Shown here: piece by piece, positions 25,468-54,597 of the stretch
Layout of the letters: each line of letters begins with the position of its first letter
Numbering within the stretch: position 1 is the stretch's first letter
NCBI GenBank assembly: GCA_002104905.1
Contig: MCFE01000600.1
Coordinates: 1-54,597 of the forward strand
DNA from: Basidiobolus meristosporus CBS 931.73
Taxonomy: Eukaryota > Fungi > Basidiobolomycota
Reading direction: 5' to 3'
Length of the DNA: 54,597 bases
Notes under the pieces: model-generated
What the model saw: the letters and a program-made list of their open reading frames with translations, nothing else
Told to the model about the DNA's origin: nothing
Database searches by the model: none
Program-made: the position numbers and the translations under genes

Positions 25468-26314
25468 CTGGCAAGTGAAATGCTCCAGGCTACTACGGTG
25501 GGCCTAGGCATAGGTTTCGGGGGATCAATCTTGTTTGCTTCAGGCACTCTATCTGAAGGATTGGGCAGGATTGACCGGTGGCTTATTGGCTCATGCCATG
25601 TGTGCATCCCTCGCTGATCATTCATATGTATAATACAGGATCATACATGCTTTGCCACTGACCAGGTGTGGTGACCTGTCACAAACCACCTTTGACTCTT
25701 CGGTCACCAGGGCCAGGGCCAGGACCAATACAGCAGTAGACATCATGGCCATATTTTCTTTCGTTTCCATTCACAGGGATCAATGACTGTATGACCTGTC
25801 CCTAGTCCAATGGACAGAATTCAAGTCTGTAGCTGTTTGCTTTATTTGTAAATTGGTCTATTCCGGATTAGAAATGATGGTTGTATTTTACATCAGCCTG
25901 CTTACATTCATGCGGGGACAATACAATCCCGAAATAGGTTAATGTACATAAATGTGGGTAGATGGACCTGTGCATCAACAACAAATTCGGCCAAGTGAGC
26001 TTATGATCTTGTTGCGTGTGATAGGTTGTGTTGAATGTTAGTACTAGACTATTTCTGAATGCCACTTTTTTGACCGGGAATCTGCGGTTTGTTCTTGTTG
26101 GTGCGCAAACAACATAATGTCTTAGGTTGTTTACAAAGAAGGATCCTGAACATGTAGATACCAAATTTACCAATAAACAATTGCAAGAGCTTATCAGAAA
26201 AGCGGAATAGACACCACGTAGCCTAGACTACAAATATTCATACAATTTCAGTGAAAGAAGTGCATGTACAATAATAAAGATATGTAGATATCCCTATGAA
26301 AAAATATTAAGAAA

Positions 26315-29300: not shown

Positions 29301-30120
29301 ATGGATCACCAATAGATATACAACATGTAGGTGAGGATTAGACTCATATTTGTAAAAGAAGGTCATGTCAAATTGATAATTATACTAGCTAGCAATAAGT
29401 ATATTCATATCTAGCATTCAGATGAAACCTCACTCAACAGAAATACTAAGTACCATGTCTCTCTCAGATATACACTCCACAAAAGTGGATTCTACTTCTT
29501 GCTCTTATTTAGGCTAACCCTACCAGAGCACTTCAATAATGCCAATTGTGTAGTCCCTCCTTGGTATTCCTATGTCAATTAAACAAAGATTTTGAATAAA
29601 TAGCTTTGCCTTATTGATACTTTCTAAAGTCCATTCCTGCCCTTCCTTGCATTACCTTCTGAGTTATATCCATTTTTGACAGCAAGTATGAGAATGCAGC
29701 TAGAGTCTATTGGTAGATATTGTGAAAAGAGGCAATAGCCCATCAATATCTAATTGCATACACACTAATTAGATCATTAACGCACTTGGTAAAGGCATGG
29801 TGAAGGTCACATAATCTAATGTACCACCAGAGTAATAATCATATCTCAAAGATAAAAGTTAACTAAAGACTAGATCAATACTCTCATAACATCAGCAGAA
29901 CTTAAAGTTTCCCTAAACAATTCTCAATATCCCAAGTTCTAGCTATTTGGCAAACAAGATGATATATTTTCAGGAGGAGTCTAGGCTAAACAACATTCAT
30001 ACTAGGCTTGGTTACAAGCTACTCATTACTTCCACAAAGAATTACAACTAAAGTTTAAAGGAAAAACACAACCTAAATGCCAGCAAAACACCACTTGAAT
30101 ACCGCTGAATACCAGCAGAT
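26315..30120. repeat. CpG-depleted degenerate repeat/transposon relic with a ~200-bp unit in four copies
   Basis: Related units at ~26315-26510, ~26590-26805, ~29885-30120 (+) and ~27720-27930 (-), sharing ATCAGCTGAATT...CAGACAT.TTTTCCAGGAGGAG.CTA.GC. No long ORF. AT-rich and almost no CG. Confidence 0.55.
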
Positions 30121-33758: not shown

Positions 33759-34364
33759 TTGAAATACTCTGTAAATGTGTGGAGATTTCAATGAATGGCA
33801 CTGGCCACTGCCTAGGAAGAACGGCTTCCAATAAATGTCATCTCTACTTAATCATTGCTTGATTTTCTATATGAATACCGGCTCTCTGAGTAGCTTAATG
33901 AGATTTCTATTCTTATCGAAGCGCAGAATGTAGTTTGCCAGTTGCCGGTACGCTCGTACCACACGATTTTGGAGTTTTCATCTAGTTCAAATAGATAGCT
34001 ATATAAGCTTGAATACTGTCTTAGGGCCGGATCACCCATTGAGCTTAGCTTAGGGGTCAACAGGAAGTATCTCGGGTGGTACTGCTACTGCAATGTATCA
34101 GCAACGAATTGTATACTCAACATCACAAGGGTCTGTGGCATCCATAAATTGAGTTTGTTAAACAAACTCGACGTACCTCACAAGGGTGTCATCAAAGGGT
34201 AGCAATAAACATTTCAACAAGTGCCATAATCAAACCGCTCACAGCATTTTGAGTGTAGTTAGTGCCTAGTAAGCCCCCCAAGGGATTCTCTTCCCAACTT
34301 CCGAATCAACTTTAGGCCTGTAATTGGTATTGCAGGGAGTTCAACTGGTTAATGTATGCTTAAT

Positions 34365-34768
34365 TTAGGGTTGGGGGTGACAGTCACCAATAGGTGGAAT
34401 ATTTATTCCAATAACCCACAATAAAGCCAAGTGTTACTTGGGTAGCATTTTAACAAGTGAGTAATGGGAAGGGTAATATTGTGAAAGCCTACCAGAAAGG
34501 CTGTTTGGTTCAAGATGAGTTTGGGTAGAGCTGAGTGGCACTGGAGGGATAGCCAAAAGAGATAATAGCCTACTGAAAATTACAACCAAGTTTGACAAGT
34601 ATGACTTGGAGGTAAGTGAGAATTGAGCATTGAGCTTAAGGTAGCTACTCTGCAAAGTGGAAACATATGTGGCATATGCAAGTACTAGGTCTTCAAAATA
34701 TTCAATATGCTGAGCAACTGCTGTATCAGGAGCTTGTCAAGTATTATTCTCCAATAAGACTGCACATT
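34365..34768 (-). mobile_element. 5'-truncated telomere-type retroelement module, RT subfamily C (C-terminal fragment)
   Basis: TTAGGGTTGGGGG junction plus 3' hairpin signal (34365-34432). The translation YWRIILD...LAYATYVSTLQSSYL...LAIPPVPLSS aligns with the C-terminus of the 714-aa RT. Confidence 0.7.
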
Positions 34769-35609
34769 GGGTTAGGGGGGAGACAGTCACCAACATGTGA
34801 AATCTTTATTACAGTGGAGACAAAGAAGCCAGTGCTACTATTGTAACTTTGATACAAGGGTGTCTAGCTGAGGGGAGTTGGTAGGTAAGTTAACAAGGAG
34901 AGATGATGGTTTCTCAGTGATCAGGACACTGTTCAGTGGGAAGGGGGGTAGCAAGAGGGGTGAGAATGATTTGTGAGCAATATTGATAAGGGGACTATGA
35001 TAAGGATTGATATTCATCATAAAGGGAGTGTGCTCCTTGAGATATTGCTGCCAAAGGTCTGTCAAGTACTTCAGGTAGGCCAGCTTGGGTTTTTCTGACT
35101 GCAGAATATAATGAGCAAACTTCTTGACATCAAGATCTCCAAGTATAGCACTCCAGCAGGAGCCAGGTGTACTGTGGTGTGTTCTCTCTTGGCCTTGATC
35201 TTTGGGTTGTTGCAGTGGTGAAGTCTGAAATATAATCTGGTTCTAAGGCAGAGAAGTCTGATATTATTGGGCATAAACCTAAAAGCATCAAGGATTGCAT
35301 GTCTGTAGGGGCATTCAGGCAGATGAGACACCAAGGAGGTAATACAGCAGACTGCAAATTTGTCAAGCTCAGTGCAGTCTCTATAAGTAAGAGAGAGAAG
35401 TGGTAAGCCAGATGCCAGGACAGGGAAGACAAACTGCCAAGTAAAAGGAGGCAGCAGGGAGCTGAAGTTGTAGGAGGAGTAACAGCTGGTGGTTTGTGGA
35501 GTGGCCATCTTGCCAGGACAATTCTCTTCTTAGGTGTGCTCTTGAGTCTAGTCCAGTAGGAAGGCAAGGAATGCCAATATTTATAGTAGAAACCTGAGCA
35601 GGTAGAGTG
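34769..35609 (-). mobile_element. Decayed 3' fragment of telomere-type retroelement, RT subfamily A
   Basis: GGGTTAGGGGGGAGACAGTCACC junction. Clearly colinear with 50715-51555 (ORF fragments 34838..35065 and 35071..35508). Interrupted at 35609 by an LTR. Confidence 0.9.
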
Positions 35610-37390
35610 TGTGGGTACTAAATGTAGTACCAACTCTTTGCCAAGAGTTCTCCCCAGAGTCCTACCCAAAGTCCCCCAGTATCCTCCCTATGAATCCCCC
35701 ATGCATCGTCCCTCCTATTCTTGCTCTTATTGAGTCAGAACACTTACCATAACAGGAAGGGGATCACACCCCTATCTTATCTCACATTGTCTATTATCTA
35801 AGCCCCTCTAAGTGACATATATATATCCAATTGAACCTAGTGAGAGAACAACAAGATTTGGGTGGAATAAACATAAGTCTTCATTAACTTGCTACCTTCT
35901 ATTGGAAGCTATTCTGAACCAAGTGGTACTGACTTGACCTACAAGCTCTCCCACTCACCAAGCACAGTCAGTAATAACCCACATATTTGGTACCATGTCT
36001 GCAGAAATAAGCACAAGTGAGGAAATGACTACTGCAATCAAACTAAAAATGTACAAGGGAAAGAGAGCAAAAGCCCTTGAGTGGTTTAATAAGTTTGGGA
36101 GAGTTGCAGTAGATGCAGGATGAGACAGCAATAAGAAAGTAAGGGAGTTTGCAAAACATATGGAAGGGTCAGCATGGCAATGGCATTATGGGTTGGAAGA
36201 CACAGTTAAAGACAACTGGGATGCACTAGAAGAAGCATACAAGACATGCTTTCAATATGTCAAAGGATACCACTACAAAGCCCTTCTACTGTCCTTACCA
36301 AAAAAAAGCAGTGAGAGCTATGAAGCCTACACTGAACTGTTTCTCCAACAAGCTTGATGTCTCCCAAAGGACAAAATTGCCAAACAACAGCTCATGAGGT
36401 ATTACATCATGGGCTTAGTCAATGAAGTAAGACATAGGGCATCCAAAGAACAACAGGGATGTAAAACATTGCAAGAGTTGGTTGAACAAGTACAAGGGGT
36501 CATCTTGCTACGGGGGCTACCCTATAGTGATACAAGTTATTGAAGGACAGGGATCCCCCATTAGAAAGGAAAAATTGCCTCCCCAAAAGACCATGAGTTG
36601 GAGGAATTATGGCAAAAGGTCCAAGAATTCTTGATCAACAAAGTCCTAGAAGTCCCCAAAGAAGGTGATAAACTCTGGGAAGCTGTTGTAGATCTAAAGG
36701 CCCAGGTGCAAGCCCTGAATCAACAGATGGAACAACTGCAACAACAGTATCTGTGTTATGTATGTGGAGAAGTAGGCCACCAGGCCCACAAATGTGAAAA
36801 ATGGTATAGACAAGAACCCATACCAGACACAAAAGAGGAGAAGGCATCAGAAGACAGAGTCCCTTGCCAGGAGGCCAACACAACTCAGTCAATCTAAACC
36901 CTCTAGTCAGAACAGTCAACATGTGGAAAAATAAGCGTCAATATGATGCTTCTAGAGAGGATGCAAAAGAGCCTGTAGTAGAGGTTCTATCAAAAGGAAA
37001 AAATGCGGAATTAGGTGAAGAAGTATGGAATGAGCCTTAGGAAGAAATGTTGAAGCAAACAAAGAACACCAGTAAGTCTTCCCACAGCCTATTCCCCATA
37101 ATGAAGGTACTAGAGCAAACCAAGGCAACCCTCCCAATGAACAATATACTGAGACTTGCCCCAACTCTAGTCATGGAGCTGATAGAGGGATTGAAGAAGA
37201 TAACAACCCTTCATGTCAACCAGACAGTCCTACAAAAACCAAACAAGGGTACATATGTAAAGGTAATTATAGGGAATACAGAGATTCTTGCCCTTATTGA
37301 CACAGGATCCTCTATATTGATCCAATCAGAGTCATTAGCAAAATATCTAAAGTTAGATATAGTCCCCAACAACACCATTCAAGTATGGTA
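35610..37390 (+). mobile_element. Truncated Ty3/Gypsy-like LTR retrotransposon (5' LTR, PBS, gag, zinc knuckle, protease)
   Basis: LTR 35610-35983 with TGTGGG...CCCACA termini and a TGGTACCA PBS-like sequence at 35988. Gag motifs W.NKF.RVA..AG*...M.GSA..W...L...W.AL...F with stops, CCHC knuckle CYVCGEVGHQAHKC, protease LALIDTGSS. No RT follows. Confidence 0.85.
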
Positions 37391-38249
37391 GTATTGCCCT
37401 AATTGCCCTAATTGCTCTATTTGCTCAATTGTCTTGACTTGGGCAATATGCTTGCTTTTATCCTGAGGATTGTAGAAAAGGTACATGGCTCACAGAGATT
37501 TGTCAGAGATGATGAAATCAGAATGTAATTAAGCTGCACACCAACTCTATCATCTGACTTTGGCACTGTAATCATGTTGCTATGCAATATTACTGTTGAT
37601 CACGTGTTGAACAAAAATATCAGCCATATCAATAGTACGTGTTCATTCATGCGGGCTGCCATACATGATTCATCTATAGCTCACATTGCATTGCTAACAG
37701 GACAGACCTCTAGGGTCTGAGGTATGTGGTCTTCTCAAACCCAAGGATCTTGCCATCAAGTGTGTTCAAGCGTGCATTGTGTAAATAGAAAGCTTAGAGT
37801 ATGCATATAAGCAATATTCAATGCACTAGGCATACAGCCAAAGTAAAGGTGGATATAGAATAGCATTTTCAAGGCATGCTCAACATCGGGAAATGAATAG
37901 AACATAACTACGGTGTAGATGTCAACCGCACTTGGGGTCAGATGCTGCATTCTCATTCATTGCTTTTGATTATTGCACTTGGTGGCCTCAATCATACATT
38001 ATGTATCAGTCCGATCCGATCAGACAAACTGCTGCGTAAACGATGACAAAGATGGGATATTTCCAACGTTATCTCGATCTGCACCATGCGAATCGATCGC
38101 CTCCTGTCGTTACCATGATGCTATTAGCTGAAACTAAACACGCAATGCTGGTCGCCATTCATGATGTCACTGGAAACATAGGTCGAGTATTTAACTGCAC
38201 CAGAGGCTCCTTCTTCCACATATCATTTCTCGAATAACTCAAAAGCACC

Positions 38250-43086: not shown

Positions 43087-44101
43087 ATGAAGTATCCAGT
43101 TGTCCAAGCAATCACCCTCTCAGCCCTGTTCTTATCCGCCTTTGGCAGTCCAAAGCTTAAGGTGATCCACCACAGCTCCTCAGATGCCTCGATGTATGAG
43201 GTCTCAACCGCTGTCATTGGGCAGAGGGAGGTAGTTATCCTTGACGCTGGGTTCACCAGATCATCCGCGCAAGAGATGATCTCTCTCCTCAAGAACACCA
43301 CCAAGCTTCCAGTCACCAAGATCTTTGCTACCCACGAGCACCCTGATCATTACTTTGGGGCCACGGAGATTCTCAAGGCTTACCCTAAAGCCGGCTTCTA
43401 TGCATCGCCAAGCGTAGTGAAGAAAATCAAGCAGCATGTAGATGAGAAAGGTATTTGCAATTCTGCCGCATCTTTCACTTACCTTGGCATCTACTGACAT
43501 TCACAAATTCTATTCCACTCCAGTGAAGCAATGGACTGGTGCTTACGCACCTGGTGAGATCCCACAAGCACCAAGAATTCCCAAGCCATTCCGAGGCAAG
43601 TCGATCACCCTTGGGGGAAACAAGAACGAGCCAATCAAACTATTGCAACCGTTTGATGGTGATGTTGAGGACGTGACAGCTTATTGGATTCCTTCCCAGA
43701 AGACACTCATCACAGGTGACATGGTGTACTCAAGCAGGATGCATGTCTGGCTTTCAGAAGCCCAGGAGCCTAGCCATCGTAAGAAATGGATTCGCAGCTT
43801 GGACTGTAAGTATACGTTGATTCGAATCGGAAGGGGTGTCACGCAGGTATTAATCTCTCCTCCAGATCTCATCCGCCTCAAGCCCAAGAAGGTGATTGCT
43901 GGGCATGTTCCTAGCACTGAGAAGCCTCAGGTGTCTGATCTTCGGGCCACCAAGGAGTATATCGAGTACTTCGATCGCCACGTCTACGGTAAAAGCTATA
44001 CAGCCCAAAAGATCTATGACCTTATGAAGAAAAGATTCCCCAACCGCATTGCTCTTGAGACCCTGAATCTCACAGCATCAGCCTATGGTCATGGCCAATG
44101 A
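43087..44101 (+). CDS. Secreted metallo-beta-lactamase-fold hydrolase; introns 43451-43523 and 43806-43865
   Basis: Signal peptide, LDAGFT, THEHPDHYFG (HxHxDH), LITGDMVY, VIAGH. Splicing restores a continuous frame. Confidence 0.9.
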
Positions 44102-44491
44102 TGCTGACTCTGAGTCAAGTTCAGTATCCCCAAATACCCCAGTAAACCCAATAAACCTCCATTTGCATGTCGCCTAACTCTTGCGCTCATCTTTTGCATA
44201 GATGCATGGGATTCACAATCAATACTCAATATACTCAGGGCTTTCTAATCTCAATCAATCAACCATACTGCTGGAAATAATATGCTTTTAATAACCAAGT
44301 ACAAAACAAATGCACGGAAAAGATTATGCTCACAAGGGTGAGCTCGTTGCTTCAACTTGATCATTCAATCCTTATCCACCTTTGGAAGTTCGAATATCAA
44401 GGTGCTCCACCTGAGCTCTTCAGATACCTCAGCTCTCAAGGTATAAGTTACTGTCACTGGGAGGAGGTGGCAATGTTTACTTGTTAAATGA

Positions 44492-45197
44492 GGGAAGGTT
44501 GCCAAGATTAGGTGAAATCTTTACATGCAGCCTAAACTAAAACAAATGAAGAAGTCAGCAGGGATGTATGCCCCTTGTATAATAGTTTTCAACCAACTTA
44601 AAGCAGTATTCCAAGGTATATCAGAGCTTTGATGTACATTGGAACGGAGTAAAGCAGCCTGGAGATTTAGAAATGTTTAAGAAAACATACAACAACAAAT
44701 GTATGGGAGTGTCTGATAAGGGAGATGAATCTAATTGCAGTGATATTTTCATGTAAAAGTAGCCAAGTGAGTGATTAATCAGGAAAGTCCTGAAAGGTGT
44801 GTATAAAGCATTTTCAGTCAAATTGGTACAAGACATCCAGAGAAAACACTTGAGTAACGTTTTTATCAAGTATATTTGCCATAGTGCAATGGCTGGTAAG
44901 CTTGATATTAGCAAGACTTAGGGGTTAAGGGGGATCAGCAATTAGCAAAAGGTGAAATCATTATATCAACAGCTCAAAATGCAGATGCAAAGTACAGTAT
45001 GGGTAGGGATAGGGGGGAGAACATTAGCAATAAGTGAAGCCTCAGTCTCAGTTGAAACATGAAAGCCATTAATGCTGATATAGCTTTGATACAAAGGATT
45101 ATAGCTGAGCAGAGCTGGTAGGTAGGTTGATAACCAGAAACAATGTCTTTTCATTGTACAAGACACTATTCAGAGTGAATGGTGGTAGCAAGAGTAG
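44492..45197 (-). mobile_element. Two older, degenerate telomere-type modules
   Basis: Degenerate 3' signals at ~44492-44557 (GGTGAAATCTTTA...AAGAAGTCAG) and 44918-44965 (TTAGGGGTTAAGGGGG...GGTGAAATC). ORF 44966..45166 has LYQSYI...LPPIP..TVL, resembling the RT C-terminus. Confidence 0.5.
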
Positions 45198-45484
45198 TTA
45201 GGGTTAGGGGTCTAAATTCTTTTATTGAATCTGATCAAGTATAGTAATACCATTTCAACTTGATTCAAGTTGAGTGGTGCATATTGTACAAAGAAAATAT
45301 ATCCATGGTAATGTGAAGGTAAATATACTGCTTAAGTTGAGTTGAGTTCTGAAAAGAAATCTGTCAAAAAATCTGGCTAGAAAATGAAGTAAAGCTGGGA
45401 GTTATTTGAAAGCAAAGCACCAAGGGAAAGTGTAGAGCTATACTACCACTTCCTGGAAGGCAGGGATCTCACAGGAAGGCAGAA

Positions 45485-45708
45485 GGGTTAGGGGGGAGGA
45501 AAGTCACCAAGTGGTGAAATCTTTATTTACTTATGACAAGTATTTAAAGAAGCCAAGTTAATCTGAAGTTATTCCTAGAAAGCTAGGTCTGAGAGATATC
45601 TTCCTGGTAAGCCAGGTCTGAGAGTTGAGAAGCTGAGTGGTACTATATTTCCTAGTTAGCTAGGTCTGAGAGAGGTTTCCTGGAAAGCCAGGCCTGAGAA
45701 GTGAGAAT
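45485..45708 (-). ncRNA. Non-coding module: four tandem stem-loops plus the conserved 3' signal (SINE-like passenger or 3' UTR fragment)
   Basis: CCTAG-N4-CTAGG at 45574 and 45651, CCTGG-N4-CCAGG at 45603 and 45679, each followed by (T/C)CTGAGA. 3' signal at 45485-45556. No ORF. Confidence 0.55.
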
Positions 45709-46377
45709 TTAGGGTTAGGAGGGGGGGGGAAACCACCGGTTGGTGTAATCTTTATTGTCAATCATTGTGAAAATAAAGAAGTCAGGGATTGATTCTGGAG
45801 TCTTGTAACATATTTGTACAGACACTTTGGGTTAATATGTAGATAGGTTGCTATTTCTTGTAGTTCCTCTGCATTGAATAGAGTGTTGAGAGGGAGTGGC
45901 GGTAGCACTAGCAATAATAACTTATGATCTATGTATTGTGATGTGCTTTTGCCAATTGGTGATATAAAGCAAAGAAATGGGGTTTGCTGAGTTACATACT
46001 CTTGCCATAGTTGATTAAGATACTTGCTATATGCTTCTTTGGGGTTTTTACTCCCCTCTATTGCTTTGGCAAATTGCTGGACTTTTGGGCACTCAATGAT
46101 AGCTGCCCAACAGGAGTTATTTTGAAGCATCTTGCAAGAAATCCATGCTTGTATCAACTCATTTGTTGATTTTTGGAGTTGAATACGTAGTCTTGTACAG
46201 AGGTACAAAATTCTAATTGAATACAGGAGTAGTCCAAACGTTACCAGGACTGCGTGGTGATACTGTGTTGGTGGGAGCCATGGTAATAAAGTATAAATGC
46301 TGTGAGAAACAAACTTGTCCAGTTTTGTCAGGTATCTTGTTGGAATAGGCATTATTGCCAATCCAAACTCCAGTACC
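45709..46377 (-). mobile_element. 5'-truncated telomere-type module, RT subfamily B (C-terminal ~200 aa)
   Basis: TTAGGGTTAGGA-G9 junction plus 3' signal. ORF 45762..46361 (LNQLWQEYVTQQTPF...LPPLPLNTLFNAEEL) aligns with the RT C-terminus (LIDLWQQYLQQHTPF...LPPFPLNSVLSTEEL). Begins at the VLEFGL motif. Confidence 0.85.
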
Positions 46378-47037
46378 TAGGGGGGGATGATCATCACCAA
46401 AGGTTGAAATCTTTATTTAAATAATAAATAAAGAAGCCAAGTTTGAATATGAATATCTGAGATCCAGGAAGCCTATAAGATAAACTTGGACTTTGCTGTA
46501 TCCCAAATATCCTCAATATCAAAGTCTAGAGGAGAGTGTAGCAAGACTGCTTGTTCACTGTAGTATTTCTTGAGGAAGTTTGTGACTTGAAGGGAAGGAG
46601 AGTTTTTCAACAAGCTGGTAAATCTTTTGAGGAGTTCTTTTTCCAGAGAGAATGGCACAAAGAGTGGAATGTCCAAGTGATGTCTGAATATATGCTCTGA
46701 GAGCTCCCAATCCAACATATTTTTGACTTCTTCTGTAAAATCTTCAACAATATCTTTGTCAAGAATAACTTCCAAGAGATCCCTGGCAATGTACTGAATG
46801 TTAATAATCTTAGGCATATGAATACCTAGGTCCTTGAGGTAGTTTCTTTGTTCTGATATTGGGAGATATCCTGCATTTCTGAAATAGCAAACAGCCCAGT
46901 TGGCAGTAGGAGGAGTATCAGGGCTGACAGGGAATCTTCTTCTGGCTGTTGAGTGCACTGGCTTAGCAGACTGTCTTGATGAAAGGGCAGCTGGTTTTGG
47001 ATGAGCTTGAAGTGCTTGGGAGTAGGTCTGAGTACAA
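46378..47037 (-). mobile_element. 5'-truncated ORF1 module
   Basis: Near-identical to 52965-53620, with its own 3' signal at 46378-46440. Truncated at GAGTACAAG and followed directly by GGGTTAGGG. Confidence 0.92.
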
Positions 47038-47136
47038 GGGTTAGGGGGGATGATCATCACCAAAGGGTGAAATCTTTATTTAAATAATAAAAAAAGAAGC
47101 CAAGTTTGAATATGAATATCTGAGATGCAGGAAGCC
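47038..47136 (-). mobile_element. ORF1-module 3' end only, interrupted by an LTR
   Basis: GGGTTAGGGGGGATGATCATCACC...GCAGGAAGCC matches 52958-53056. Homology stops where TGTTGTG begins at 47137. Confidence 0.9.
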
Positions 47137-50100
47137 TGTTGTGCATCAACATTTAAAACTTAGCCAATTTTACTCCGTTTGAAAATCTAGTACCCTAACT
47201 GACTTTCCCTAACCCAAACATAACAAATCCCAGTTACAGTTTATTTTATCCCACCTCAGAATCTATTGTTAGCTATCACACCTGATCTATTTTCAAATGG
47301 TCATTACATTATCAACCTATCTGCCAAGCCTTCCCAGGTGATTAGTCATCTGAGATCTATCCAACCATGGTGCAGTTGCCAAGACATCAGTTGATTGATG
47401 ATGTAATTTTCATTTATCTTATGCACCTGTGAACACCCAAATTTATCTCAATCAATCCAGTCCCTTGGCGCTTACTAATTCAACTTGATCAGAAAAGTAT
47501 AAATAAAGTTTACTGAACCTTTTGGTTTAGTGTGTGTCTCAACAAAATTAAGATTCTGTCTCAGCAAAAATAAGAATCCAACAATTCTGTTCTAGTTTCT
47601 ATCCAAGCCTAGTATATCTAGCACTCCAAAGAACACCAAGCCTAGCCTGCCTAGCAAACAAATATCATTGTCTTTATAGCCAACCCAGCTATATCCAAGA
47701 CCAATATTAGATCAGAATCTTTCTGCTAATATTTCCGCTACTCTCTGATAATTCTAAGATTCTGCACTTAATTGTCCCTTTGGTTCAGTTAAACCATTCA
47801 AGAGTTTTATTACACTTTCTCTTGGATACAACATTTTTTTTGTTGAATTCCATTACATTCAGCCAATTAGAAGATGTCCTCAGCAGCAAGCAATCCAAAC
47901 CTTTCCATGTTGGAAGAGCCCAGAAGAAATCAGGAAGAACTTACTGAACAGCTTGAAAACATCATGCTTGAAAGAAATACCATGATGCTTGAGCACTCAA
48001 AGCTTGCCAAAACAAGATCTGATAATCACTGTAGAGATGAACTCCTTGAAGTTATATCCGGTTACCAAGATGAAATTGGAATAATTAAGGAAGCACTGGA
48101 GAATATTGCCATAGTAATTGACAGCATTGAAAATCCGCCAAGCCTTGCTCTGCATCAGCCACCAAAAAGTCATGCCTTTGAGTCCTCCAGATCTACATCT
48201 CCTTCTAGACCTGCCCTGGTGGTTGTCCCAAGATCCTTGCCTGTTTATGCTGAAGGCACCAATGCCATCAAGAATCCAACAGAGTTTCTTTACAAGTTTA
48301 GTCACATCTTAGCTGCACACCAGCTAGACCCTGACACCAACTGGGCTAGACTCCTGCCTCTCTGTCTCACAATGCAAGATGCTGACTGGGTTGAAGTGAA
48401 CATTCCTTCCAATAGTACGTGGAAAATTGCCCAAAACCTCTTTTGCAGCCATTTTGAAGATCCTCTCAAGAAAGCACATCTGAACTGCGACTTATGGAAA
48501 ACTAAAATGCAAAAAGGTGAATCTGTGCAACACTTCTGTGATAGATTCCAAAGACAAATGAGATTAGCTGGAGTTGGTGATGATAATCCATCACTTACTG
48601 CTCATTTTCTTTCAAACTTTTCACACCAGCTACAGAGCAATATTGCTATTGTCCAAGCATGTAACCCTGCACGTACCTATGACCAGATCTCAGAGATATG
48701 TACACTGGCAATCACCTTGACTGCAGCTGTTAGCCAGACTTCAGGCAACTCAACCCAATATCCACAACAGCCGGAAAAGAGACCAGTCATGTGACCAAGA
48801 AGCAATCAACCGCTACCAAGCACTGTGAGCTTCATGGAAAATGCTATCATTCTACCAGTGAATGCAAAGGCATCACCAAGCAGTCAAACAAGTCAGGAAA
48901 CACTGCAGAAAAGCAGCAAAACACCAAAACTGATAATCCATATGCTGATGACAAGTGATTTAAATGTGGAAATATGGGACATAGATCACCTGCCTGTCCT
49001 GAGAAGAACTCCACACCATCAGCCAAAATTACCCAGATCCTTGATGATCATTCAGCCAATGATACAATGAGGTATGAAGAAGCATATGAAGAACTTACAG
49101 TTCAAGATTATAACAACCTCTTTGAGTTTCCGGCTAAAATTGCAACTGTTCAAGAAAAGAAGCAACCAATCACACAGCTCAAAGCCACAGAAGTGCCACT
49201 CACCCTCAATGGCCAATCATATGTAGCACTACTGGATACTGGATCATCCAACTCTATTGTATCACCCAATGTAGTCAGAGAACTCAATTTGGAGATAGAA
49301 AAACGTCCAGGAAAAATCATTCTTGCAGCTAAGGATCTCTCAGCCCCAAGAATTGGCATTACCAACCCAATCAACATACATTGTGGCTCAGTAACCATAA
49401 TCCATCAGATGGAAGTGATTGACATACCAGATGGACCTCAGGTAGTCATTGGTCCGGACACCTTCAGCAAACTTGGCTTTCACATAGGCGGACTACCAGT
49501 TTCCTATCCAGGAATCACTAAATCTCAGCCACTCATAATGGATCAAATCCCAGAAATTATCTCATCCCAACCAGAAGAAGAAGAGTTAACCCCAACTTTT
49601 CAAGAATATTCTCAATCAGTCAAATTGGATATTCAGCTGGCCATAGAGAGAAATCAGGCCATTCCAAGGAACAGCTTCTGCACCATCCCAGAATCCATTG
49701 TTACACTAGAGACCCCACCTGGTGAGTCAACATGGAGGAGGCAATACCCAATTCCGCATTCATGTCAACACTTAGTTGATGAGATAGTCCAAAAATGGGC
49801 TGACAATGGAATTATCACTCAAGCCCCTGTCAACACAACATTCAACAGCCCTTTGACGCTTGCACCAAAGAAAGATGCTGATGAAAATCTAACCTTGAAG
49901 AGACCCTGTTTGGACCCCAGACCTCTGAACAAGCTTCTCCAAGATGACAAGTTTCCAATTCCAAGAATCCAAGATATCTTTTCCACACTATCAGGAGCAA
50001 AAGTATTCTCCAAGTTGGACTTGAAGGATGCATATCACTGATTCCAGATCCATCCTGATCACCAGCATAAGACTGCCTTCACTTGGAATAATATGCAATG

Positions 50101-50714
50101 GATGTTTCAGGGAGCTCCCTTTGGCCTAAAGACACTTACCAGCAAGTTTCAGAGAGTCATGACTATAATACTCAAGAATACACCATACGCATTGGTATTT
50201 GTTGATGATGTCATCATATTTTCCACTAACCGTGACGATCATGCAACCCATGTCACTGATGTAATCAACAGACTGACAACTGCTGGACTGATTCTCAATG
50301 CTGAAAAGTGCAGTTTTGCCCGCCTCAAAATCAATCTACTTGGATTTATAGTCACACCAGCTGGCCACCAATTAGATCCTTTCAAACTGGTCAATATCCC
50401 AGAATGGCCAAAACCCACTAGCGCCAAGCAACTTCAACATTATCTTGGAGTATTCAACTATTTCAGGGAACACATACCACTCATGTCCTCATTGAGTGCC
50501 CTTTAGATGCATTATGCCATAGCCCTGATCTCACCTCAGCCTGGAACAAGACTCATGACCAAGCCTTTGAGTCACTCTGCCAACTGCTTCCACAAGCACC
50601 CACCTTATCCTACCCAGACTTTACTAGCCCTTTGTTGTTGCTACAGATGCATCTAATGTTGGGTTAGGGGCAGTCCTCTATCAAGATGAAGACCAAAATC
50701 CGCCTCACTGGATC
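47137..50714 (+). mobile_element. Truncated, decayed Ty3/Gypsy LTR retrotransposon (5' LTR, gag, two Zn knuckles, protease, RT, start of RNase H)
   Basis: LTR 47137-47833 (TGTTGT...ACAACA). Gag ORF 47874..48794, CELHGKCYHSTSEC and (*)FKCGNMGHRSPAC, protease ALLDTGSS, RT SKLDLKDAYH*...PFGL...VFVDDVII, RNase H ATDASNVGLGAVL. Ends abruptly at 50714 with no integrase or 3' LTR. Confidence 0.95.
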
Positions 50715-52937
50715 TTAGGGGGGAGACAGTCACCAACAGGTGAAATCTTTATTTCAGTTGAAACAAAGAAGCCAGCGCTACTGTTGTAGCTTTGATACAA
50801 GAGTGTGTAGCTGAGGGGAATTTGTAGGTAAGTTAATAAGAAGTGATGATAGTTCTTCAGTGCTCAAGACACTGTTCAGTGGGAAGGGGGGTAGCAAGAG
50901 AGGTAAGAATGACTTGAGAACAACATTAATGAGGGGAATGTGATAAGGGTTGATATTCATCATAAAGGGAGTGTGCTGCTGCAGATATTGCTGCCAAAGG
51001 TCTATCAAGTACTTCAGGTAGGCCAGCTTGGGTTTTTCTGACTGCAGAATATAGTGTGCAAACTTCTTGACTTCAGGATCTCCAAGTATAGTTCTCCAGC
51101 AGGAGCCAGGTGTTATGTGGTGTGTTCTCTTCCAGGCCTTAATCAGTGGGTTGCTGCAGTTGTGAAGTCTGAGGTATAATCTGGTTCTAAGGTAGAGAAG
51201 TCTGATCTTATAGGGCATAAACCCAAAAGCACCAAGAATAGCATGTCTGTAGGGGCATTCAGGCAAATGAGACACCAAGGAGGTAATGCACCATACTGCA
51301 AACTTGTCAAGCTTAGTGCAGTCTCTAGAAGTAAGAGAGAGAAGTGGTAAGCCAAATTCCAGGACAGGGAAGACAAACTGCTTGAGTAGAAGGAGGCAGC
51401 TGGGAGCTGAAGTTGTAGGAGGAGTAACAGCCAGTAGCTTGTGGAGTGCCTGTCTTGCCAGGATAATTCTCTTCTTCAGGTGTGCTCCAGAGTCTAGTCC
51501 AGTAGTAAGGAAAGGAAAGCCAAGATATGTAGCAGAAACCTGAGCAGGTAGAGTGGAGTTCTCCAAGTTGATGGGTGAGCCCAAAGGTACTGTCTTTGCA
51601 ATGGAAAGCTGGAGATTATTCTTCTGCAGATACTGGTGGTTGGTCTGGGAGTCTTGTTGCACATTGGAGGAGGATATTCTGATGTCATCAGCAAAGAGAG
51701 TAACCAGGCAGTCAGCTGAGAGTCTTGGGAAATCATTCAGGAAGATGGCAAACAGTATAGGACCAAGCACAGAGCCTTGAACCACTCCATTAGGAACTGG
51801 GAACACAGCTGATTGCTCACTTGGGTGCAGAATTCTTGCTTGTGGATCCAGAAACAGAGACCTGACAAGGAGGGTGAGAGAGGTACTGGAGAAGCATTGC
51901 AACTTGGACCAAAGCAGATTTCTGTCAACTAAATCAAAGGCCTTAGTAATATCAAACAGAACAGAGGGATACTTGCACTGGAGAGAGTGATCTTGGCTAA
52001 GTATGACTGCATATTCCAAGGAGAGGCCAGGAACAAAGCCAAACTGTGCAGGATGAAACTTGAGTGAGTCAGAGTAGAGCTCCTGAGCAAGCAGAAGCTC
52101 AAACACCTTTCTGCAGGTGGGCAGCAGAGATATTGGCCTGTAGGAGCTAGGATCCAGGTGCTTTCCTTTACCCTTGTACAGTGGCAGAACCTTTGCAAAG
52201 GACCATTCCTCAGGAGTAGAAAGCTGGGCTGAGCATTGTTGAAACAGTGGAAGCAGAAGTGCAGACATGGCCTTGGTACTAGTCTTCAGAAGCTCATAAG
52301 AGATTGTGTCAACACCTGGAGCAGAAGAGTTGGGAAGCCTCTTGAGCACATTATGGATTCTCCTTTGATCAAGTGCAAGTGGGATGGGCAGAGTCTTGAA
52401 GTCAGGATGAAAGCCAGGAGTTGAGTACTGCTTTGTAGAGAAGAAGATGTTAGCCAGCTGTTCTGTTGAAGGTAACTTCTTGGAAGAGGGCCTCATTGCC
52501 CTGTAGAGTCTTGATACTGTTCTTGTAATAGAGTTGGAAGATTGCAGAGGCAAAGAACTCATAATATGATCCCAGAGCTGAGTATGCAGAGTGTGGTGAA
52601 TTGCCTTGGAGTGATGCATTGCTGTCAGGAGGAGTTTCTCTGTTTTTGGGTTAGGGAAACTCAGGTAGCTTTGTTGCAGGGCTGAAACAATGGATTCCCA
52701 TTTTCTTGAGGTAACAGCAGTAGTCTTGCATGGCAGTGAGAGGGAGGCAGACACCAGAATCAGATGCTTCACAAAGAGCCAGGCATAGTTGAGATCATCT
52801 GGCAGAGAAAGTAGCAAACTGGCAAGCTTCAAGTAGTTCCCAAAGTCTTTCTTCTGATTCTTGGTAGCTTTGTGGGTGAGCACAGTAAGTTTTGGCAGCT
52901 TCTTCTTCACAACTGGTTGCATGGAAAGGGACCAGGC
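50715..52937 (-). mobile_element. Telomere-type non-LTR RT module, subfamily A; intact 714-aa ORF 50778..52922 without recognisable endonuclease
   Basis: LINE-type RT motifs SAPGVDTISYELLK, WSFAKVLPLYKGKG, SYRPISLLPTCRKVFE, QFGFVPG, FDITKAFDLV, GVVQGSVLGPILF, LFADDI, TYLGF. No APE N-terminus and no CCHC/PD-(D/E)xK C-terminus seen. Confidence 0.93.
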
Positions 52938-52966
52938 TTAGGGCTAGGGTAGGGTTAGGGTTAGGG
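52938..52966 (+). repeat. Interstitial degenerate telomeric repeats between the RT and ORF1 modules
   Basis: TTAGGG CTAGGG TAGGG TTAGGG TTAGGG. Confidence 0.95.
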
Positions 52967-53896
52967 GGGATGATCATCAGCAAAGGGTGAAATCTTTATT
53001 TAAATAATAAATAAAGAAGCCAAGTTTGAATATGGATATCTGAGATGCAGGAAGCCTACAAGATAAACTTGGACTTTGCTGTATCCCATATATCCTCAAT
53101 ATCAAAGTCTAGAGGAGAGTGTAGCAAGACTGCTTGTTCACTGTAGTATTTCTTGAGGAAGTTTGTGACTTGAAGGGAAGGAGAGTTTTTCAACAAGCTG
53201 GTAAATCTTTTGAGGAGTTCTTTTTCCAGAGAGAATGGCACAAAGAGTGGAATGTCCAAGTGATGTCTGAATATATGCTCTGAGAGCTCCCAATCCAACA
53301 TATTTTTGACTTCTTCTGTAAAATCTTCAACAATATCTTTGTCAAGAATAACTTCCAAGAGATCCCTGGCAATGTACTGAATATTAATAATCTTAGGCAT
53401 ATGAATACCTAGGTCCTTGAGGTAGTTTCTTTGTTCTGATATTGGGAGATATCCTGCATTTCTGAAATAGCAAACAGCCCAGTTGGCAGTAGGAGGAGTA
53501 TCAGGGCTGACAGGGAATCTTCTTCTGGCTTTAGAGTGCACTGGCTTAGGAGACTGTCTTGATGGAAGGGCAGCTGGTTTTGGATGAGCTTGAAGTGCTT
53601 GAGAGTAGGTCTGAGTACAAGTAGTAGAAGTTCCTGGTTGCTGAGAATTTTCAGATTGACTGGATGAAGAGCTAATTGAGGGGTAGCAAGGTAAGGAAGA
53701 AGCTGAAAGAGAAGTGGAGAGGGCTGGGTGAAGTTCAGAAAGAGTTTTGAAAAGAATTTGGAACTGAGATTTCAACATTGAGTTTTCAGCCTCAAGAAGA
53801 GAAACTCTTTGTTCAAGGTAAGAAGTCTGTAAAGAGTGAAAGTTGGGTAAAGACATGGAAGTAATAAATAAGAAGAATGGAGTAGTTGGGGTGGGA
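52967..53896 (-). mobile_element. Complete ORF1 module (266-aa ORF 53056..53856) with its own 3' signal
   Basis: N-terminal coiled coil LEQRVSLLEAENSMLKSQF, low-complexity linker with TYSQAL, and a C-terminal domain RNYLKDLGIHMPKIINIQYIARDLLEVIL. Its position and composition are typical of a LINE ORF1/gag-like protein. Confidence 0.8.
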
Positions 53897-54440
53897 GGGT
53901 GGGAAAATAGGTAAGAAGAAAAGAGAGGAAAGATCTGAAATTGAAAATCTCAGAATTTATAGATAGGTGGACAAGGGTAGAGGATTGATTAATCCAGGGT
54001 TAGGGAAAAATAGGTAAGAAGAAAAGAGAGGAAAGATCTGAAATTGAAAATCTCAGAATTTATAGATAGGTGGACAAGGGTAGAGGATTGATTAATCCAG
54101 GGTTAGGGAAAAATAGGTAAGAAGAAAAGAGAGGAAAGATCTGAAATTGAAAATCTCAGAATTTATAGATAGGTGGACAAGGGTAGAGGATTGATTAATC
54201 CAGGGTTAGGGAAAAATAGGTAAGAAGAAAAGAGAGGAAAGATCTGAAATTGAAAATCTCAGAATTTATAGATAGGTGGACAAGGGTAGAGGATTGATTA
54301 ATCCAGGGTTAGGGAAAAATAGGTAAGAAGAAAAGAGAGGAAAGATCTGAAATTGAAAATCTCAGAATTTATAGATAGGTGGACAAGGGTAGAGGATTGA
54401 TTAATCCAGGGTTAGGGAAAAATAGGTAAGAAGAAAAGAG
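53897..54440. repeat. Telomere-adjacent 103-bp tandem repeat, ~5.3 copies, each containing GGGTTAGGG
   Basis: Unit starts at 53997, 54100, 54203, 54306 and 54409 (period 103; full copies look identical). A variant unit starts at ~53897. The last unit is truncated by the telomere. Confidence 0.95.
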
Positions 54441-54597
54441 GGTAGGGTTAGGGTTAGGGTTAGGGTTAGGGTTAGGGTTAGGGTTAGGGTTAGGGTTAGG
54501 GTTAGGGTTAGGGTTAGGGTTAGGGTTAGGGTTAGGGTTAGGGTTAGGGTTAGGGTTAGGGTTAGGGTTAGGGTTAGGGTTAGGGTTAGGGTTAGGG
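54441..54597 (+). repeat. Telomere, (TTAGGG)25 preceded by GGTAGGG
   Basis: Perfect TTAGGG array from 54448 to the end of the window. Confidence 0.99.

What the first reader, a model, noticed from the sequence alone, without database searches (positions are those of the whole stretch)
50715..54597. Apparently endonuclease-less LINE-type retroelement attached to the chromosome end and primed from telomeric repeats
Seen in the sequence: an open 714-aa non-LTR RT ORF and an open 266-aa ORF1 lie on the minus strand right under the telomere. Their 5' ends face the tip, and their 3' ends are joined on the + strand to TTAGGG followed by a G-run. The RT ORF starts at the post-endonuclease linker (DDLNYAWLFVKHLILVSASLSLP) and ends without a CCHC/PD-(D/E)xK domain. 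There is no poly(A) tail and no target-site duplication. Established knowledge: telomere-specific non-LTR elements (TRAS/SART, TART, MoTeR, Giardia GilM/T) encode APE or RLE nucleases. The known nuclease-free, chromosome-end-primed elements (Athena, Coprina, Terminons) have Penelope-type RTs. Inference: this is a LINE-clade RT that has converged on the Athena/Terminon lifestyle. The RNA 3' end (..CCCCCUAACCC) anneals to the G-overhang and the free chromosome 3'-OH primes cDNA synthesis, extending the chromosome. The observed polarity is exactly what that mechanism predicts.
Basis: partly seen in the sequence, partly recalled or inferred. Interest (0 to 1): 0.92.

Follow-up and report, generated by a model that had tools for sequence, protein, structure and literature searches.

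The report
Truncated telomere-capping LINE, not nuclease-free
The "nuclease-free" jumping gene at this fungal chromosome tip is a shortened copy of an element whose full-length copies carry a well-conserved DNA-cutting domain, but it does belong to an unusual set of elements that cap worn or broken chromosome ends.

Summary
The sequence features are real: a terminal (TTAGGG)26 array, two open minus-strand ORFs with their 5' ends facing the tip, 3' ends joined to TTAGGGGGG, no poly(A) and no TSD.

At least 18 sampled copies elsewhere in the genome extend the same reading frame 208 codons upstream into an APE endonuclease domain.
- All 8 catalytic positions are kept in 18 of 18 copies, and omega is about 0.12.
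- The AF2 model matches APE1, ExoIII and L1-EN.

The window copy is therefore a 5'-truncated LINE (2.2 of about 4.6 kb) that happens to start at an internal ATG.

The 266-aa "ORF1" is not part of that LINE. It belongs to a separate ORF1-only element with its own tail, at least 30 copies and dN/dS of about 0.14.

What survives is the end-capping behaviour.
- Across 158 tail junctions, only 0-36 nt of telomeric DNA lies between stacked elements, against terminal arrays of 114-230 bp.
- In this window the LINE tail sits directly on a Ty3/gypsy element broken inside its RNase H region.

So additions happen on very short or broken ends. Whether the priming 3'-OH is the natural end or an APE nick is unresolved.

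The scan has already described this system on other contigs of this Basidiobolus genome. I found no paper describing it; the fungal telomeric LINEs covered in the papers I read are REL-type.

The parts
54439..54597 (+). Terminal telomere array, (TTAGGG)26.7. The G-rich strand runs 5'->3' to the contig end.
53904..54440 (-). 5' region of the ORF1-only element 'B': 5.2 tandem 103-bp monomers, each containing CCCTAACCC. Other B copies carry 0-8 monomers.
53056..53856 (-). B ORF1, 266 aa, with a coiled-coil N-terminus. It is homologous (29% identity) to the C-terminal half of the LINE's own ORF1. dN/dS is about 0.14 against a 93%-identical subfamily.
52961..53055 (-). B 3' tail: hairpin 1, hairpin 2 (this copy has a G>C change in the GGUGA arm), then single-stranded C6 (52964-52969) and UAA (52961-52963).
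52939..52963 (.). Irregular telomeric stub of about 4 repeats between the truncated 5' end of the LINE copy and the B tail. It overlaps the UAA listed under the B tail, because those three bases could belong to either.
52923..52938 (-). Last 5 codons of the APE domain (AWSLS) that survive the 5' truncation.
50778..52922 (-). 714-aa open frame, equal to codons 209-922 of the LINE ORF2 (linker, RT and C-terminal region). It differs from the family consensus at 10 synonymous and 13 non-synonymous sites.
50715..50777 (-). LINE 3' UTR: two hairpins, then C6 (50718-50723) and UAA (50715-50717). No poly(A).
47874..50714 (+). Decayed Ty3/gypsy-type LTR retrotransposon (gag, protease, RT, start of RNase H), cut off at 50714 where the LINE tail begins. 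A 98% identical copy on another contig continues past this point.
46384..47137 (-). Older stacked pieces: a 5'-truncated B copy (46384-47038) and a 91-nt B tail fragment (47047-47137), each ending in C6UAA.
45795..46376 (-). 5'-truncated C-terminal ORF2 fragment of a different LINE family, 43% identical to this one.
34778..35609 (-). Older (90% identical) 3' fragment of the same LINE family in a now-internal relic stack, in the same orientation.

Best explanation
The 714-aa ORF is the RT half of a 5'-truncated copy (2.2 of about 4.6 kb) of a two-ORF, APE-bearing LINE family.

Full-length copies have this layout:
- a 5' UTR of about 255 nt;
- ORF1 of about 503 aa;
- a UGA stop;
- an in-frame ORF2 of 922 codons (APE, RT and a C-terminal region);
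- a 60-nt 3' UTR.

The 266-aa ORF belongs to a separate, non-autonomous ORF1-only element. That element carries the same 3' RNA module, so it is probably copied by the LINE's enzyme.

Both sit in a one-way stack built by successive additions to the chromosome end. Each RNA ends in two hairpins followed by a single-stranded C6UAA. cDNA synthesis starts on a G-strand 3'-OH in a fixed register, so the + strand reads TTA-GGGGGG-antisense element.

Additions occur when the telomere is nearly gone or the end is broken. The new 5' end is then capped by telomerase or by the next element.

Shown here: the identity of the elements, the truncation, the APE domain and its selective constraint, the stacking, the short junction tracts, and the capping of a broken Ty3/gypsy element.

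Inferred: tail pairing as the priming step, and mobilisation of the ORF1-only element in trans.

Unresolved: whether the 3'-OH is the natural chromosome end or an APE nick.
For: **Truncation and the APE domain**
- One search lists 62 RT copies at 97-98% identity, and most have a 922-codon open frame.
- Searches show the extra N-terminus carries GDLN and SDH motifs and matches PF14529 (E 3.5e-4).
- In some searches, N8, Y93, D126, N128, D171, D201 and H202 align with APE LINEs.
- The AF2 model has pLDDT 88.8. Foldseek matches APE1, ExoIII and L1-EN at probability 1.0 and E about 1e-11.
- In one search, 18 of 18 full-length copies keep all 8 catalytic positions. There are 33 synonymous against 12 non-synonymous differences, giving omega 0.12.

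**Two separate elements**
- Searches show the two ORFs belong to different elements.
- One search gives dN/dS of about 0.14 for the 266-aa ORF.
- In one search, five tail families fold into the same two-hairpin structure with a single-stranded C6UAA end.

**Additions to short or broken ends**
- One search found 158 non-redundant tail junctions. The telomeric tract after the C-run is usually 3-10 nt and never exceeds 36 nt.
- Terminal arrays are 114-230 bp.
- Truncated 5' ends abut either a terminal array or the next element's tail.
- The overlap with the telomere register averages 1.65 nt, against 0.26 nt in control phases.
- Searches show the window's LINE tail joined to a Ty3/gypsy copy cut in its RNase H region. 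The rest of that copy is absent distally.

**Conservation**
- Relatives at 48-63% identity in other public samples keep the in-frame UGA layout, the APE domain and the C-run-TAACCC tail.
Against: - The Pfam APE hit is below the gathering score (20.9 against 27.4 bits).
- A profile built from this clade alone finds no solved structure.
- The alignment behind the AF2 model included bona fide APE LINEs.
- The metal-binding Glu is Asp in the whole clade, so nuclease activity is unproven.
- Strong constraint on the APE domain argues that a nick is needed. That fits poorly with simple priming from free ends.
- Microhomology at 5' junctions is also typical of ordinary LINE 5' joining.
- No RNA data were available.
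Confidence: 0.8

Rival explanations
1. One reading: a LINE lineage that has lost its endonuclease and lives like Athena, Coprina or Terminons. On this view it is primed only from the free G-overhang.
For: The window copy itself has no nuclease domain. Its tail can pair with the G strand. The polarity fits.
Against: Full-length copies carry an in-frame APE domain that is intact in 18 of 18 copies, with omega 0.12. The window copy is cut 5 codons after the SDH motif. The RT is LINE-type, not PLE-type.
Confidence: 0.03
2. A pure TRAS/SART-type mechanism. The APE nicks the G strand inside double-stranded telomere arrays, and ordinary TPRT inserts the element. The short tracts and missing distal DNA would then come from later deletions.
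For: The APE domain is conserved and constrained. The junction register is fixed. The orientation equals that of TRAS1 (from my own knowledge).
Against: - None of 158 junctions has more than 36 nt of telomeric DNA, although terminal arrays are 114-230 bp.
- 72 of 158 junctions have fewer than 6 nt of it.
- There are junctions onto non-telomeric DNA, including the broken gypsy copy here.
- Most copies are 5'-truncated, whereas only full-length TRAS/SART copies are reported at Bombyx telomeres (PMC4700185).
- SART1 needs at least 3 repeats and a poly(A) tail (PMC7265360).
Confidence: 0.12
3. Fully endonuclease-independent end healing. The natural or broken 3' end is always the primer, and the APE domain serves another step, such as end trimming or rare internal insertions.
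For: Short or absent tracts, capping of a broken gypsy copy, and microhomology at the junctions. The clade-wide E-to-D change at the metal site.
Against: The APE domain is at least as constrained as the RT (omega 0.12 against 0.23). All other catalytic residues are kept across lineages 48-63% identical.
Confidence: 0.25
4. The stack is spread mainly by recombination or break-induced replication between chromosome ends, not by ongoing retrotransposition.
For: Identical junctions recur on several contigs, for example the LINE tail + TAACC + the same SINE 5' end in L019, L023, L030 and L055. Relic stacks lie 10-28 kb inside the window.
Against: - Truncation points and junctions differ widely between ends.
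- Copies are 99% identical with intact ORFs, and their differences show omega of 0.12-0.23. This implies replication through functional RNA and protein.
Confidence: 0.07

Closest known systems
HeT-A / TART / TAHRE of Drosophila (Jockey-clade telomeric LINEs)
   Same: One-way head-to-tail stacks with 5' ends facing the tip. Variable 5' truncation. An autonomous APE+RT element alongside a Gag/ORF1-only partner. Healing of broken ends. (The Drosophila facts are from my own knowledge and PMC5537684.)
   Different: Here a telomerase-type (TTAGGG)n array still caps the ends. The tails are C6UAA(CCC...) rather than poly(A). The host is a fungus. Clade membership was not tested.
TRAS / SART of Bombyx mori (R1-clade, APE, telomere-repeat-specific)
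   Same: APE+RT ORF2 together with an ORF1. They coexist with telomerase repeats. The junction register in the repeat is fixed. A 3' UTR structure is needed for RT recognition (PMC4700185).
   Different: TRAS/SART have poly(A) tails. SART1 needs at least 3 repeats (PMC7265360). Only full-length copies are reported at the telomere (PMC4700185). Here most copies are truncated, the inter-element tracts are mostly shorter than one repeat, and some junctions are on non-telomeric DNA.
Athena / Coprina / Terminons (endonuclease-deficient Penelope-like elements)
   Same: The 3' ends carry sequence complementary to the telomeric G strand, and the elements attach at chromosome ends with their 5' ends outward. 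(From my own knowledge.)
   Different: Those elements have PLE-type RTs and no nuclease. This family has a LINE RT with a conserved in-frame APE domain.
MoTeR, FoTeR and Cnl1 (fungal telomeric non-LTR elements)
   Same: Fungal elements in subtelomeric arrays, with 5' tandem repeats (VNTRs) and an orientation towards the end (PMC12857005; bioRxiv 10.1101/2021.08.11.455996).
   Different: PMC12857005 places those elements in the CRE/SLACS group, with a REL endonuclease C-terminal to the RT. Here the nuclease is an N-terminal APE, and Pfam finds no REL domain.
Endonuclease-independent L1 insertion at dysfunctional telomeres (Morrish et al. 2007, cited in PMC4700185)
   Same: An APE-bearing LINE that can use a deprotected chromosome end as the primer.
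   Different: In L1 this is a rare side reaction in mutant cells. Here the telomeric end is the only location seen in about 250 kb of sampled subtelomere.

Membership tests
APE-type non-LTR retrotransposon (LINE) | LINE-type reverse transcriptase | tested here: met
   RVT_1 at E 3.8e-24. The best solved relative is L1 ORF2p at E 6e-13. Most distant homologues combine APE and RVT_1.
APE-type non-LTR retrotransposon (LINE) | N-terminal APE (EEP-fold) endonuclease in frame with the RT | tested here: met
   Absent from the window copy but present in full-length copies. The support is a PF14529 match at E 3.5e-4 (below the cut-off), conserved catalytic residues, and an AF2 model matched by Foldseek to APE1, ExoIII and L1-EN. 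The catalytic Glu is Asp.
APE-type non-LTR retrotransposon (LINE) | ORF1 upstream of ORF2, and 5'-truncated copies | tested here: met
   An ORF1 of about 503 aa lies directly upstream. Truncation points are spread continuously along the element.
APE-type non-LTR retrotransposon (LINE) | Poly(A) or simple-repeat tail, and target-site duplications | tested here: not met
   The tail is C4-12 TAA(CCC...), with no poly(A) in any of 158 junctions. No TSD is present at the window copy.
Endonuclease-deficient telomere-attached retroelements (Athena/Coprina type) | No nuclease domain in full-length copies | tested here: not met
Endonuclease-deficient telomere-attached retroelements (Athena/Coprina type) | Penelope-like RT | tested here: inconclusive
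   No reference PLE or TERT sequences were on hand for a tree. No TERT or PLE chain was hit at E<=1, and the domain layout is that of a LINE.
TRAS/SART | Insertion inside telomeric repeat arrays, with repeats on both flanks | tested here: not met
   Tracts are 0-36 nt. 72 of 158 junctions have fewer than 6 nt. The window copy is joined to gypsy pol.
TRAS/SART | Poly(A) tail | tested here: not met
TRAS/SART | R1-clade RT, and an APE that cuts the telomere repeat specifically | not testable with these tools
   This needs reference clade sequences and a nicking assay.
Drosophila HTT-type telomeric LINEs | One-way terminal stacks with a Gag-only partner | tested here: met
   149 of 158 tails lie on the minus strand; the 9 on the plus strand I attributed to loci at left contig ends. 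Thirteen RT and seven ORF1 loci are cut off by the right end of their contig, within 1.5 kb of the gene. The ORF1-only element has at least 30 copies.
Drosophila HTT-type telomeric LINEs | Replacement of telomerase repeats | tested here: not met
   Contig ends carry terminal (TTAGGG)n arrays of 114-230 bp.
MoTeR/FoTeR/Cnl1 (CRE/SLACS-type) | REL endonuclease and CCHC motif C-terminal to the RT | tested here: not met
   Pfam finds only RVT_1 and the N-terminal APE.

The most novel reading that the evidence does not exclude
[quoted passage not shown] It may run a Drosophila-like retroelement capping system in parallel with telomerase.

On this reading a consortium of elements is copied onto chromosome ends whenever the TTAGGG array is lost or the end breaks. 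The consortium consists of an APE-LINE, an ORF1-only partner and SINEs, all sharing one telomere-pairing 3' module. The APE domain, with its clade-wide Glu-to-Asp change, would be adapted to process such ends rather than to open internal targets.
Probability: 0.35. Interest if true: 0.8.

Novelty: new variant of a known kind. Interest (0 to 1): 0.6.

Why it matters
The specific claim of a nuclease-free LINE converging on Penelope-like end-primed elements is not what is here, so it should not be carried forward.

What is here still matters. It is an APE-type LINE set, with an ORF1-only partner, that builds chromosome ends in a fungus alongside telomerase. Its tails are telomere-complementary rather than poly(A), and there is direct evidence that it caps broken ends.

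This sits between the Bombyx and Drosophila systems. It could make the step from "telomere-targeting parasite" to "end-healing partner" testable in a culturable organism with very many chromosome ends.

The papers I read place the known fungal telomeric LINEs (MoTeR, FoTeR, Cnl1) in the REL-type group (PMC12857005). My library searches returned no description of this system.

Tried and rejected
- **Genome-wide mapping** of copies and telomere arrays could not be done. All statistics therefore rest on 63 own-genome loci plus the window.
- **RNA evidence:** no RNA run was listed, so transcript ends are unknown and read laying was not used.
- **Sequence-only detection of the APE domain was weak.** phmmer of ORF2 against PDB chains matched only the RT region. 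A profile of this clade alone gave no PDB hit. The wide-profile hits are driven by the distant APE LINEs in that alignment and are not counted as evidence.
- **Pfam finds no family** for the 266-aa ORF beyond weak coiled-coil-like hits, and none for the LINE's ORF1 fragment.
- **No formal RT tree** against named LINE clades, PLEs and TERT was built, because no named reference sequences were available. The clade (Tad1, R1, Jockey and so on) is left open.
- **AATAAA as a poly(A) signal** 33 nt upstream of the end was considered. It forms the 3' arm of hairpin 1 in all five tail families, and no copy has an A-run, so this reading was set aside but not excluded.
- **Selection on the window's 714-aa frame** was considered as a reason for its intactness. 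The copy is simply young (99% identical to the consensus; 10 synonymous and 13 non-synonymous differences).
Full report
**1. Observation**

The window is a whole contig (G000:C925) and ends in (TTAGGG)26.7 at 54439-54597.

Reading inward from that array, the minus strand carries these features:
- 5.2 tandem 103-bp units (53904-54440);
- an open 266-aa ORF (53056-53856);
- a 90-nt tail ending in C6 TAA (52961-52969);
- a 25-nt irregular telomeric stub (52939-52963);
- an open 714-aa ORF (50778-52922), whose only Pfam match is RVT_1 (E 3.8e-24);
- a 60-nt tail ending in C6 TAA (50715-50723).

There is no poly(A), no TSD, and no REL or CCHC domain.

Housekeeping genes lie in the first 25 kb: a PDI-like thioredoxin, beta-tubulin and malate dehydrogenase. 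The tubulin is 92-93% identical to Basidiobolus ranarum and B. meristosporus proteins. This confirms the organism named in earlier scan notes.

**2. The RT copy is truncated, and the family has an endonuclease**

A six-frame search of the window's own genome returned 62 scored RT copies at 97-98% identity, out of 1613 first-look candidates. Most have a 922-codon open frame, against 719 codons in the window.

In one full-length copy (L003), the extra N-terminus reads ...LLLNCNS...LCLIDV...CYLPPS...GDLN...CVDW...SDH. This runs straight into the Met that starts the window ORF. That Met is codon 209 of the frame. The window copy keeps only five codons upstream of it.

The evidence that this N-terminus is an APE domain is as follows:
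- Pfam gives Exo_endo_phos_2 at E 3.5e-4. This is below the gathering score.
- When aligned with 28 APE-bearing LINE proteins, N8, Y93, D126, N128, D171, D201 and H202 fall in the catalytic columns.
- The metal-binding Glu is Asp in all four clade members, whereas it is Glu in 27 of 27 others.
- An AF2 model of residues 1-226 has pLDDT 88.8 and pTM 0.87. Foldseek matches it to APE1, ExoIII and an L1 endonuclease at probability 1.0 and E about 1e-11. One caveat applies: the alignment used for the model contained genuine APE LINEs.
- Across 18 full-length copies the APE region shows 33 synonymous and 12 non-synonymous differences from consensus (omega 0.12). It has no stop codons, and all eight catalytic positions are intact in 18 of 18 copies.
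- The RT part of the same family gives omega of about 0.23.

The window holds a 5'-truncated copy with a fortuitous internal ATG.

**3. Full-length anatomy**

A complete copy in L062 shows these parts:
- a 5' UTR of about 255 nt;
- an ORF1 of about 503 aa, with an N-terminal Cys-rich motif, a coiled coil and a C-terminal domain;
- a TGA stop;
- the ORF2 frame, which opens on the very next codon in the same frame.

The same in-frame ORF1-TGA-CT(A/C)-ORF2 layout holds in five relatives at 48-63% protein identity, recovered from other public samples. This suggests stop-codon readthrough or reinitiation.

**4. The 266-aa ORF belongs to another element**

It is only 29% identical to the C-terminal half of the LINE's own ORF1.

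Together with the monomers and its own tail, it forms a discrete family that I call B. At least 30 copies were sampled. They carry 0-8 monomers and never an ORF2. On other contigs B lies distal or proximal to LINE copies, in either order.

Its ORF is under purifying selection. dN/dS is about 0.14 against a 93%-identical subfamily and 0.06-0.28 for 21 of the 22 near-identical copies (one is at 0.57).

Five tail families, including the LINE and B, fold into one architecture:
- hairpin 1, with a UCUUUA/UAAAGA base;
- hairpin 2, UCACC-loop-GGUGA;
- a pyrimidine-rich single strand ending in C6UAA.

B is thus best read as a HeT-A-like ORF1-only partner, copied in trans through the shared 3' module. 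That last step is an inference.

**5. How the stack is built**

The sampled loci hold 158 non-redundant tail junctions. Of these, 149 lie on the minus strand. The 9 plus-strand tails I attributed to loci near left contig ends, though this was not tabulated locus by locus.

After the C-run the telomeric tract is usually 3-10 nt.
- "TAA" alone occurs in 29 cases.
- 72 of 158 junctions have fewer than 6 nt.
- The longest tract is 36 nt.

By contrast, terminal arrays at contig ends are 114-230 bp. If insertion positions were uniform within such arrays, a tract of 36 nt or less would have a probability of at most about 0.3 per event. That is not tenable for 158 of 158 events.

Truncated 5' ends are spread continuously along the element. 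Each abuts either a terminal array or the next element's tail. The overlap with the telomere register averages 1.65 nt, against 0.26 nt in control phases.

The window's own junction is the clearest case. The LINE tail (TTA+G6) is joined at 50714/50715 to a Ty3/gypsy element. That element has gag, protease, RT and the start of RNase H. A 98%-identical copy on another contig continues past this point into the rest of RNase H. In the window, however, everything distal to the junction is LINE, stub, B and telomere.

So the chromosome was once broken or eroded inside the gypsy element and was capped by the LINE. That LINE was itself later shortened and given about four irregular telomeric repeats, and then B was added.

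Additions therefore occur on nearly naked or broken ends, not on normal-length telomeres. SART1 needs at least 3 repeats and a poly(A) tail (PMC7265360). Only full-length copies are reported at Bombyx telomeres (PMC4700185).

**6. What remains open**

The strong constraint on the APE domain says the nuclease matters. The junction data say the primer is effectively a chromosome end.

Three possibilities remain that I cannot separate with these tools:
- the APE nicks the last repeats of a short stub;
- the APE trims the end;
- the APE serves only a minority pathway.

No RNA run was listed, so the RNA 3' end is also untested.

**7. Comparison with known systems and novelty**

The closest analogues are these:
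- Drosophila HeT-A/TART shares the stacks, the Gag-only partner and the healing behaviour.
- Bombyx TRAS/SART shares the APE and the coexistence with telomerase repeats.
- Athena-type PLEs share the telomere-complementary 3' end.

This family fails at least one defining feature of each (see the membership table). The fungal telomeric LINEs covered in the papers I read (MoTeR, FoTeR, Cnl1) are placed in the REL-endonuclease CRE/SLACS group (PMC12857005).

My searches of the paper library found no description of this system in Basidiobolus, and none of an APE-type telomeric LINE in fungi.

Earlier notes of this scan describe the same stacks on other contigs of this genome (s1-222099, s1-202185, s1-192774). 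Notes on this same window flag the separate ORF1 unit, the shared 3' signal and the lack of CpG. My tests agree with all of them.

[quoted passage not shown] That fits the very large number of contig ends carrying these elements.

**8. Verdict**

The headline of a nuclease-free LINE is refuted. The window copy is an ordinary 5'-truncated member of an unusual family. That family is a new variant of telomere-specific LINEs, with real evidence for capping chromosome ends.

Noticed in passing
window 50715-54440; L003 1441-5142; L064, L066, L067: CpG is almost absent from intact, active elements. The 3.7-kb LINE reference has 1 CpG against about 187 expected. It has no CGN Arg codons, no NCG codons, and no C|G codon boundaries (45 expected). 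Relatives at 63% protein identity have 0 of 238 and 4 of 236 expected CpGs. Other repeats in the window are also CpG-poor (o/e 0.03-0.15) with excess TpG/CpA, whereas genes are at 0.7-0.9. This suggests CpG-directed mutation of repeats, with the surviving lineages purged of CpG.
   Followed up: partly
L062 8926-9180 (minus strand): The LINE's only cluster of CpGs (6) lies in the 5' UTR. It sits next to a motif, AAAAGCAGTC(A/G)C, that recurs in the 5' regions of relatives L067 and L071. There is also an internal CCCTAACCCTAA. This may be a promoter.
   Followed up: no
L003 4264-4272; L064 2112-2120; L065 905-913; L066 2669-2677; L067 2198-2206; L071 1666-1674: ORF1 and ORF2 are in the same frame, separated by a single TGA followed by CTA or CTC. 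This holds in all six lineages examined. ORF2 mostly lacks an ATG at its start. It looks like programmed readthrough or reinitiation, giving an ORF1-ORF2 fusion.
   Followed up: partly
L003 ORF2 residue 33 (also L064, L065, P0003): The catalytic metal-binding Glu of the APE domain is Asp in the whole clade, but Glu in 27 of 27 other APE LINEs aligned.
   Followed up: partly
window 53904-54440 and the B copies in L032-L060: The 103-bp 5' monomers of the ORF1-only element vary from 0 to 8 copies between chromosome ends. Many copies start at the same base of the unit (CTCTTTTCTTCTTA...). Each unit contains CCCTAACCC. This is reminiscent of L1 promoter monomers and of the MoTeR/FoTeR 5' VNTRs.
   Followed up: partly
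window 26000-30000, 34000-38000, 44000-47200: CpG-poor blocks carry further tails and telomere-like junctions in the same orientation (for example 34772, 45488, 47041). They are separated by DNA with normal CpG content at 30-34 kb and 38-44 kb. These look like relic chromosome ends now lying internal.
   Followed up: no
window 45795-46376 (-): An ORF2 C-terminal fragment only 43% identical to the main LINE. So at least one more autonomous family uses the same ends.
   Followed up: no
L066 5444-5665: A Logan contig from another sample (ERR14127404) shows the same kind of stacking. A related LINE tail ending in C5TAACCCTAA is followed about 100 nt later by a second B-like tail ending in C5TAACCC. 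The system is therefore not confined to this assembly.
   Followed up: no
all contigs: 57 of 62 RT hits, and nearly all ORF1 hits, are on the minus strand. Where a contig end could be inferred from a cut-off locus, it is almost always the right end. So most contigs seem oriented with the telomere on the right. The reason is unknown and may lie in the assembly or the scan's processing.
   Followed up: no
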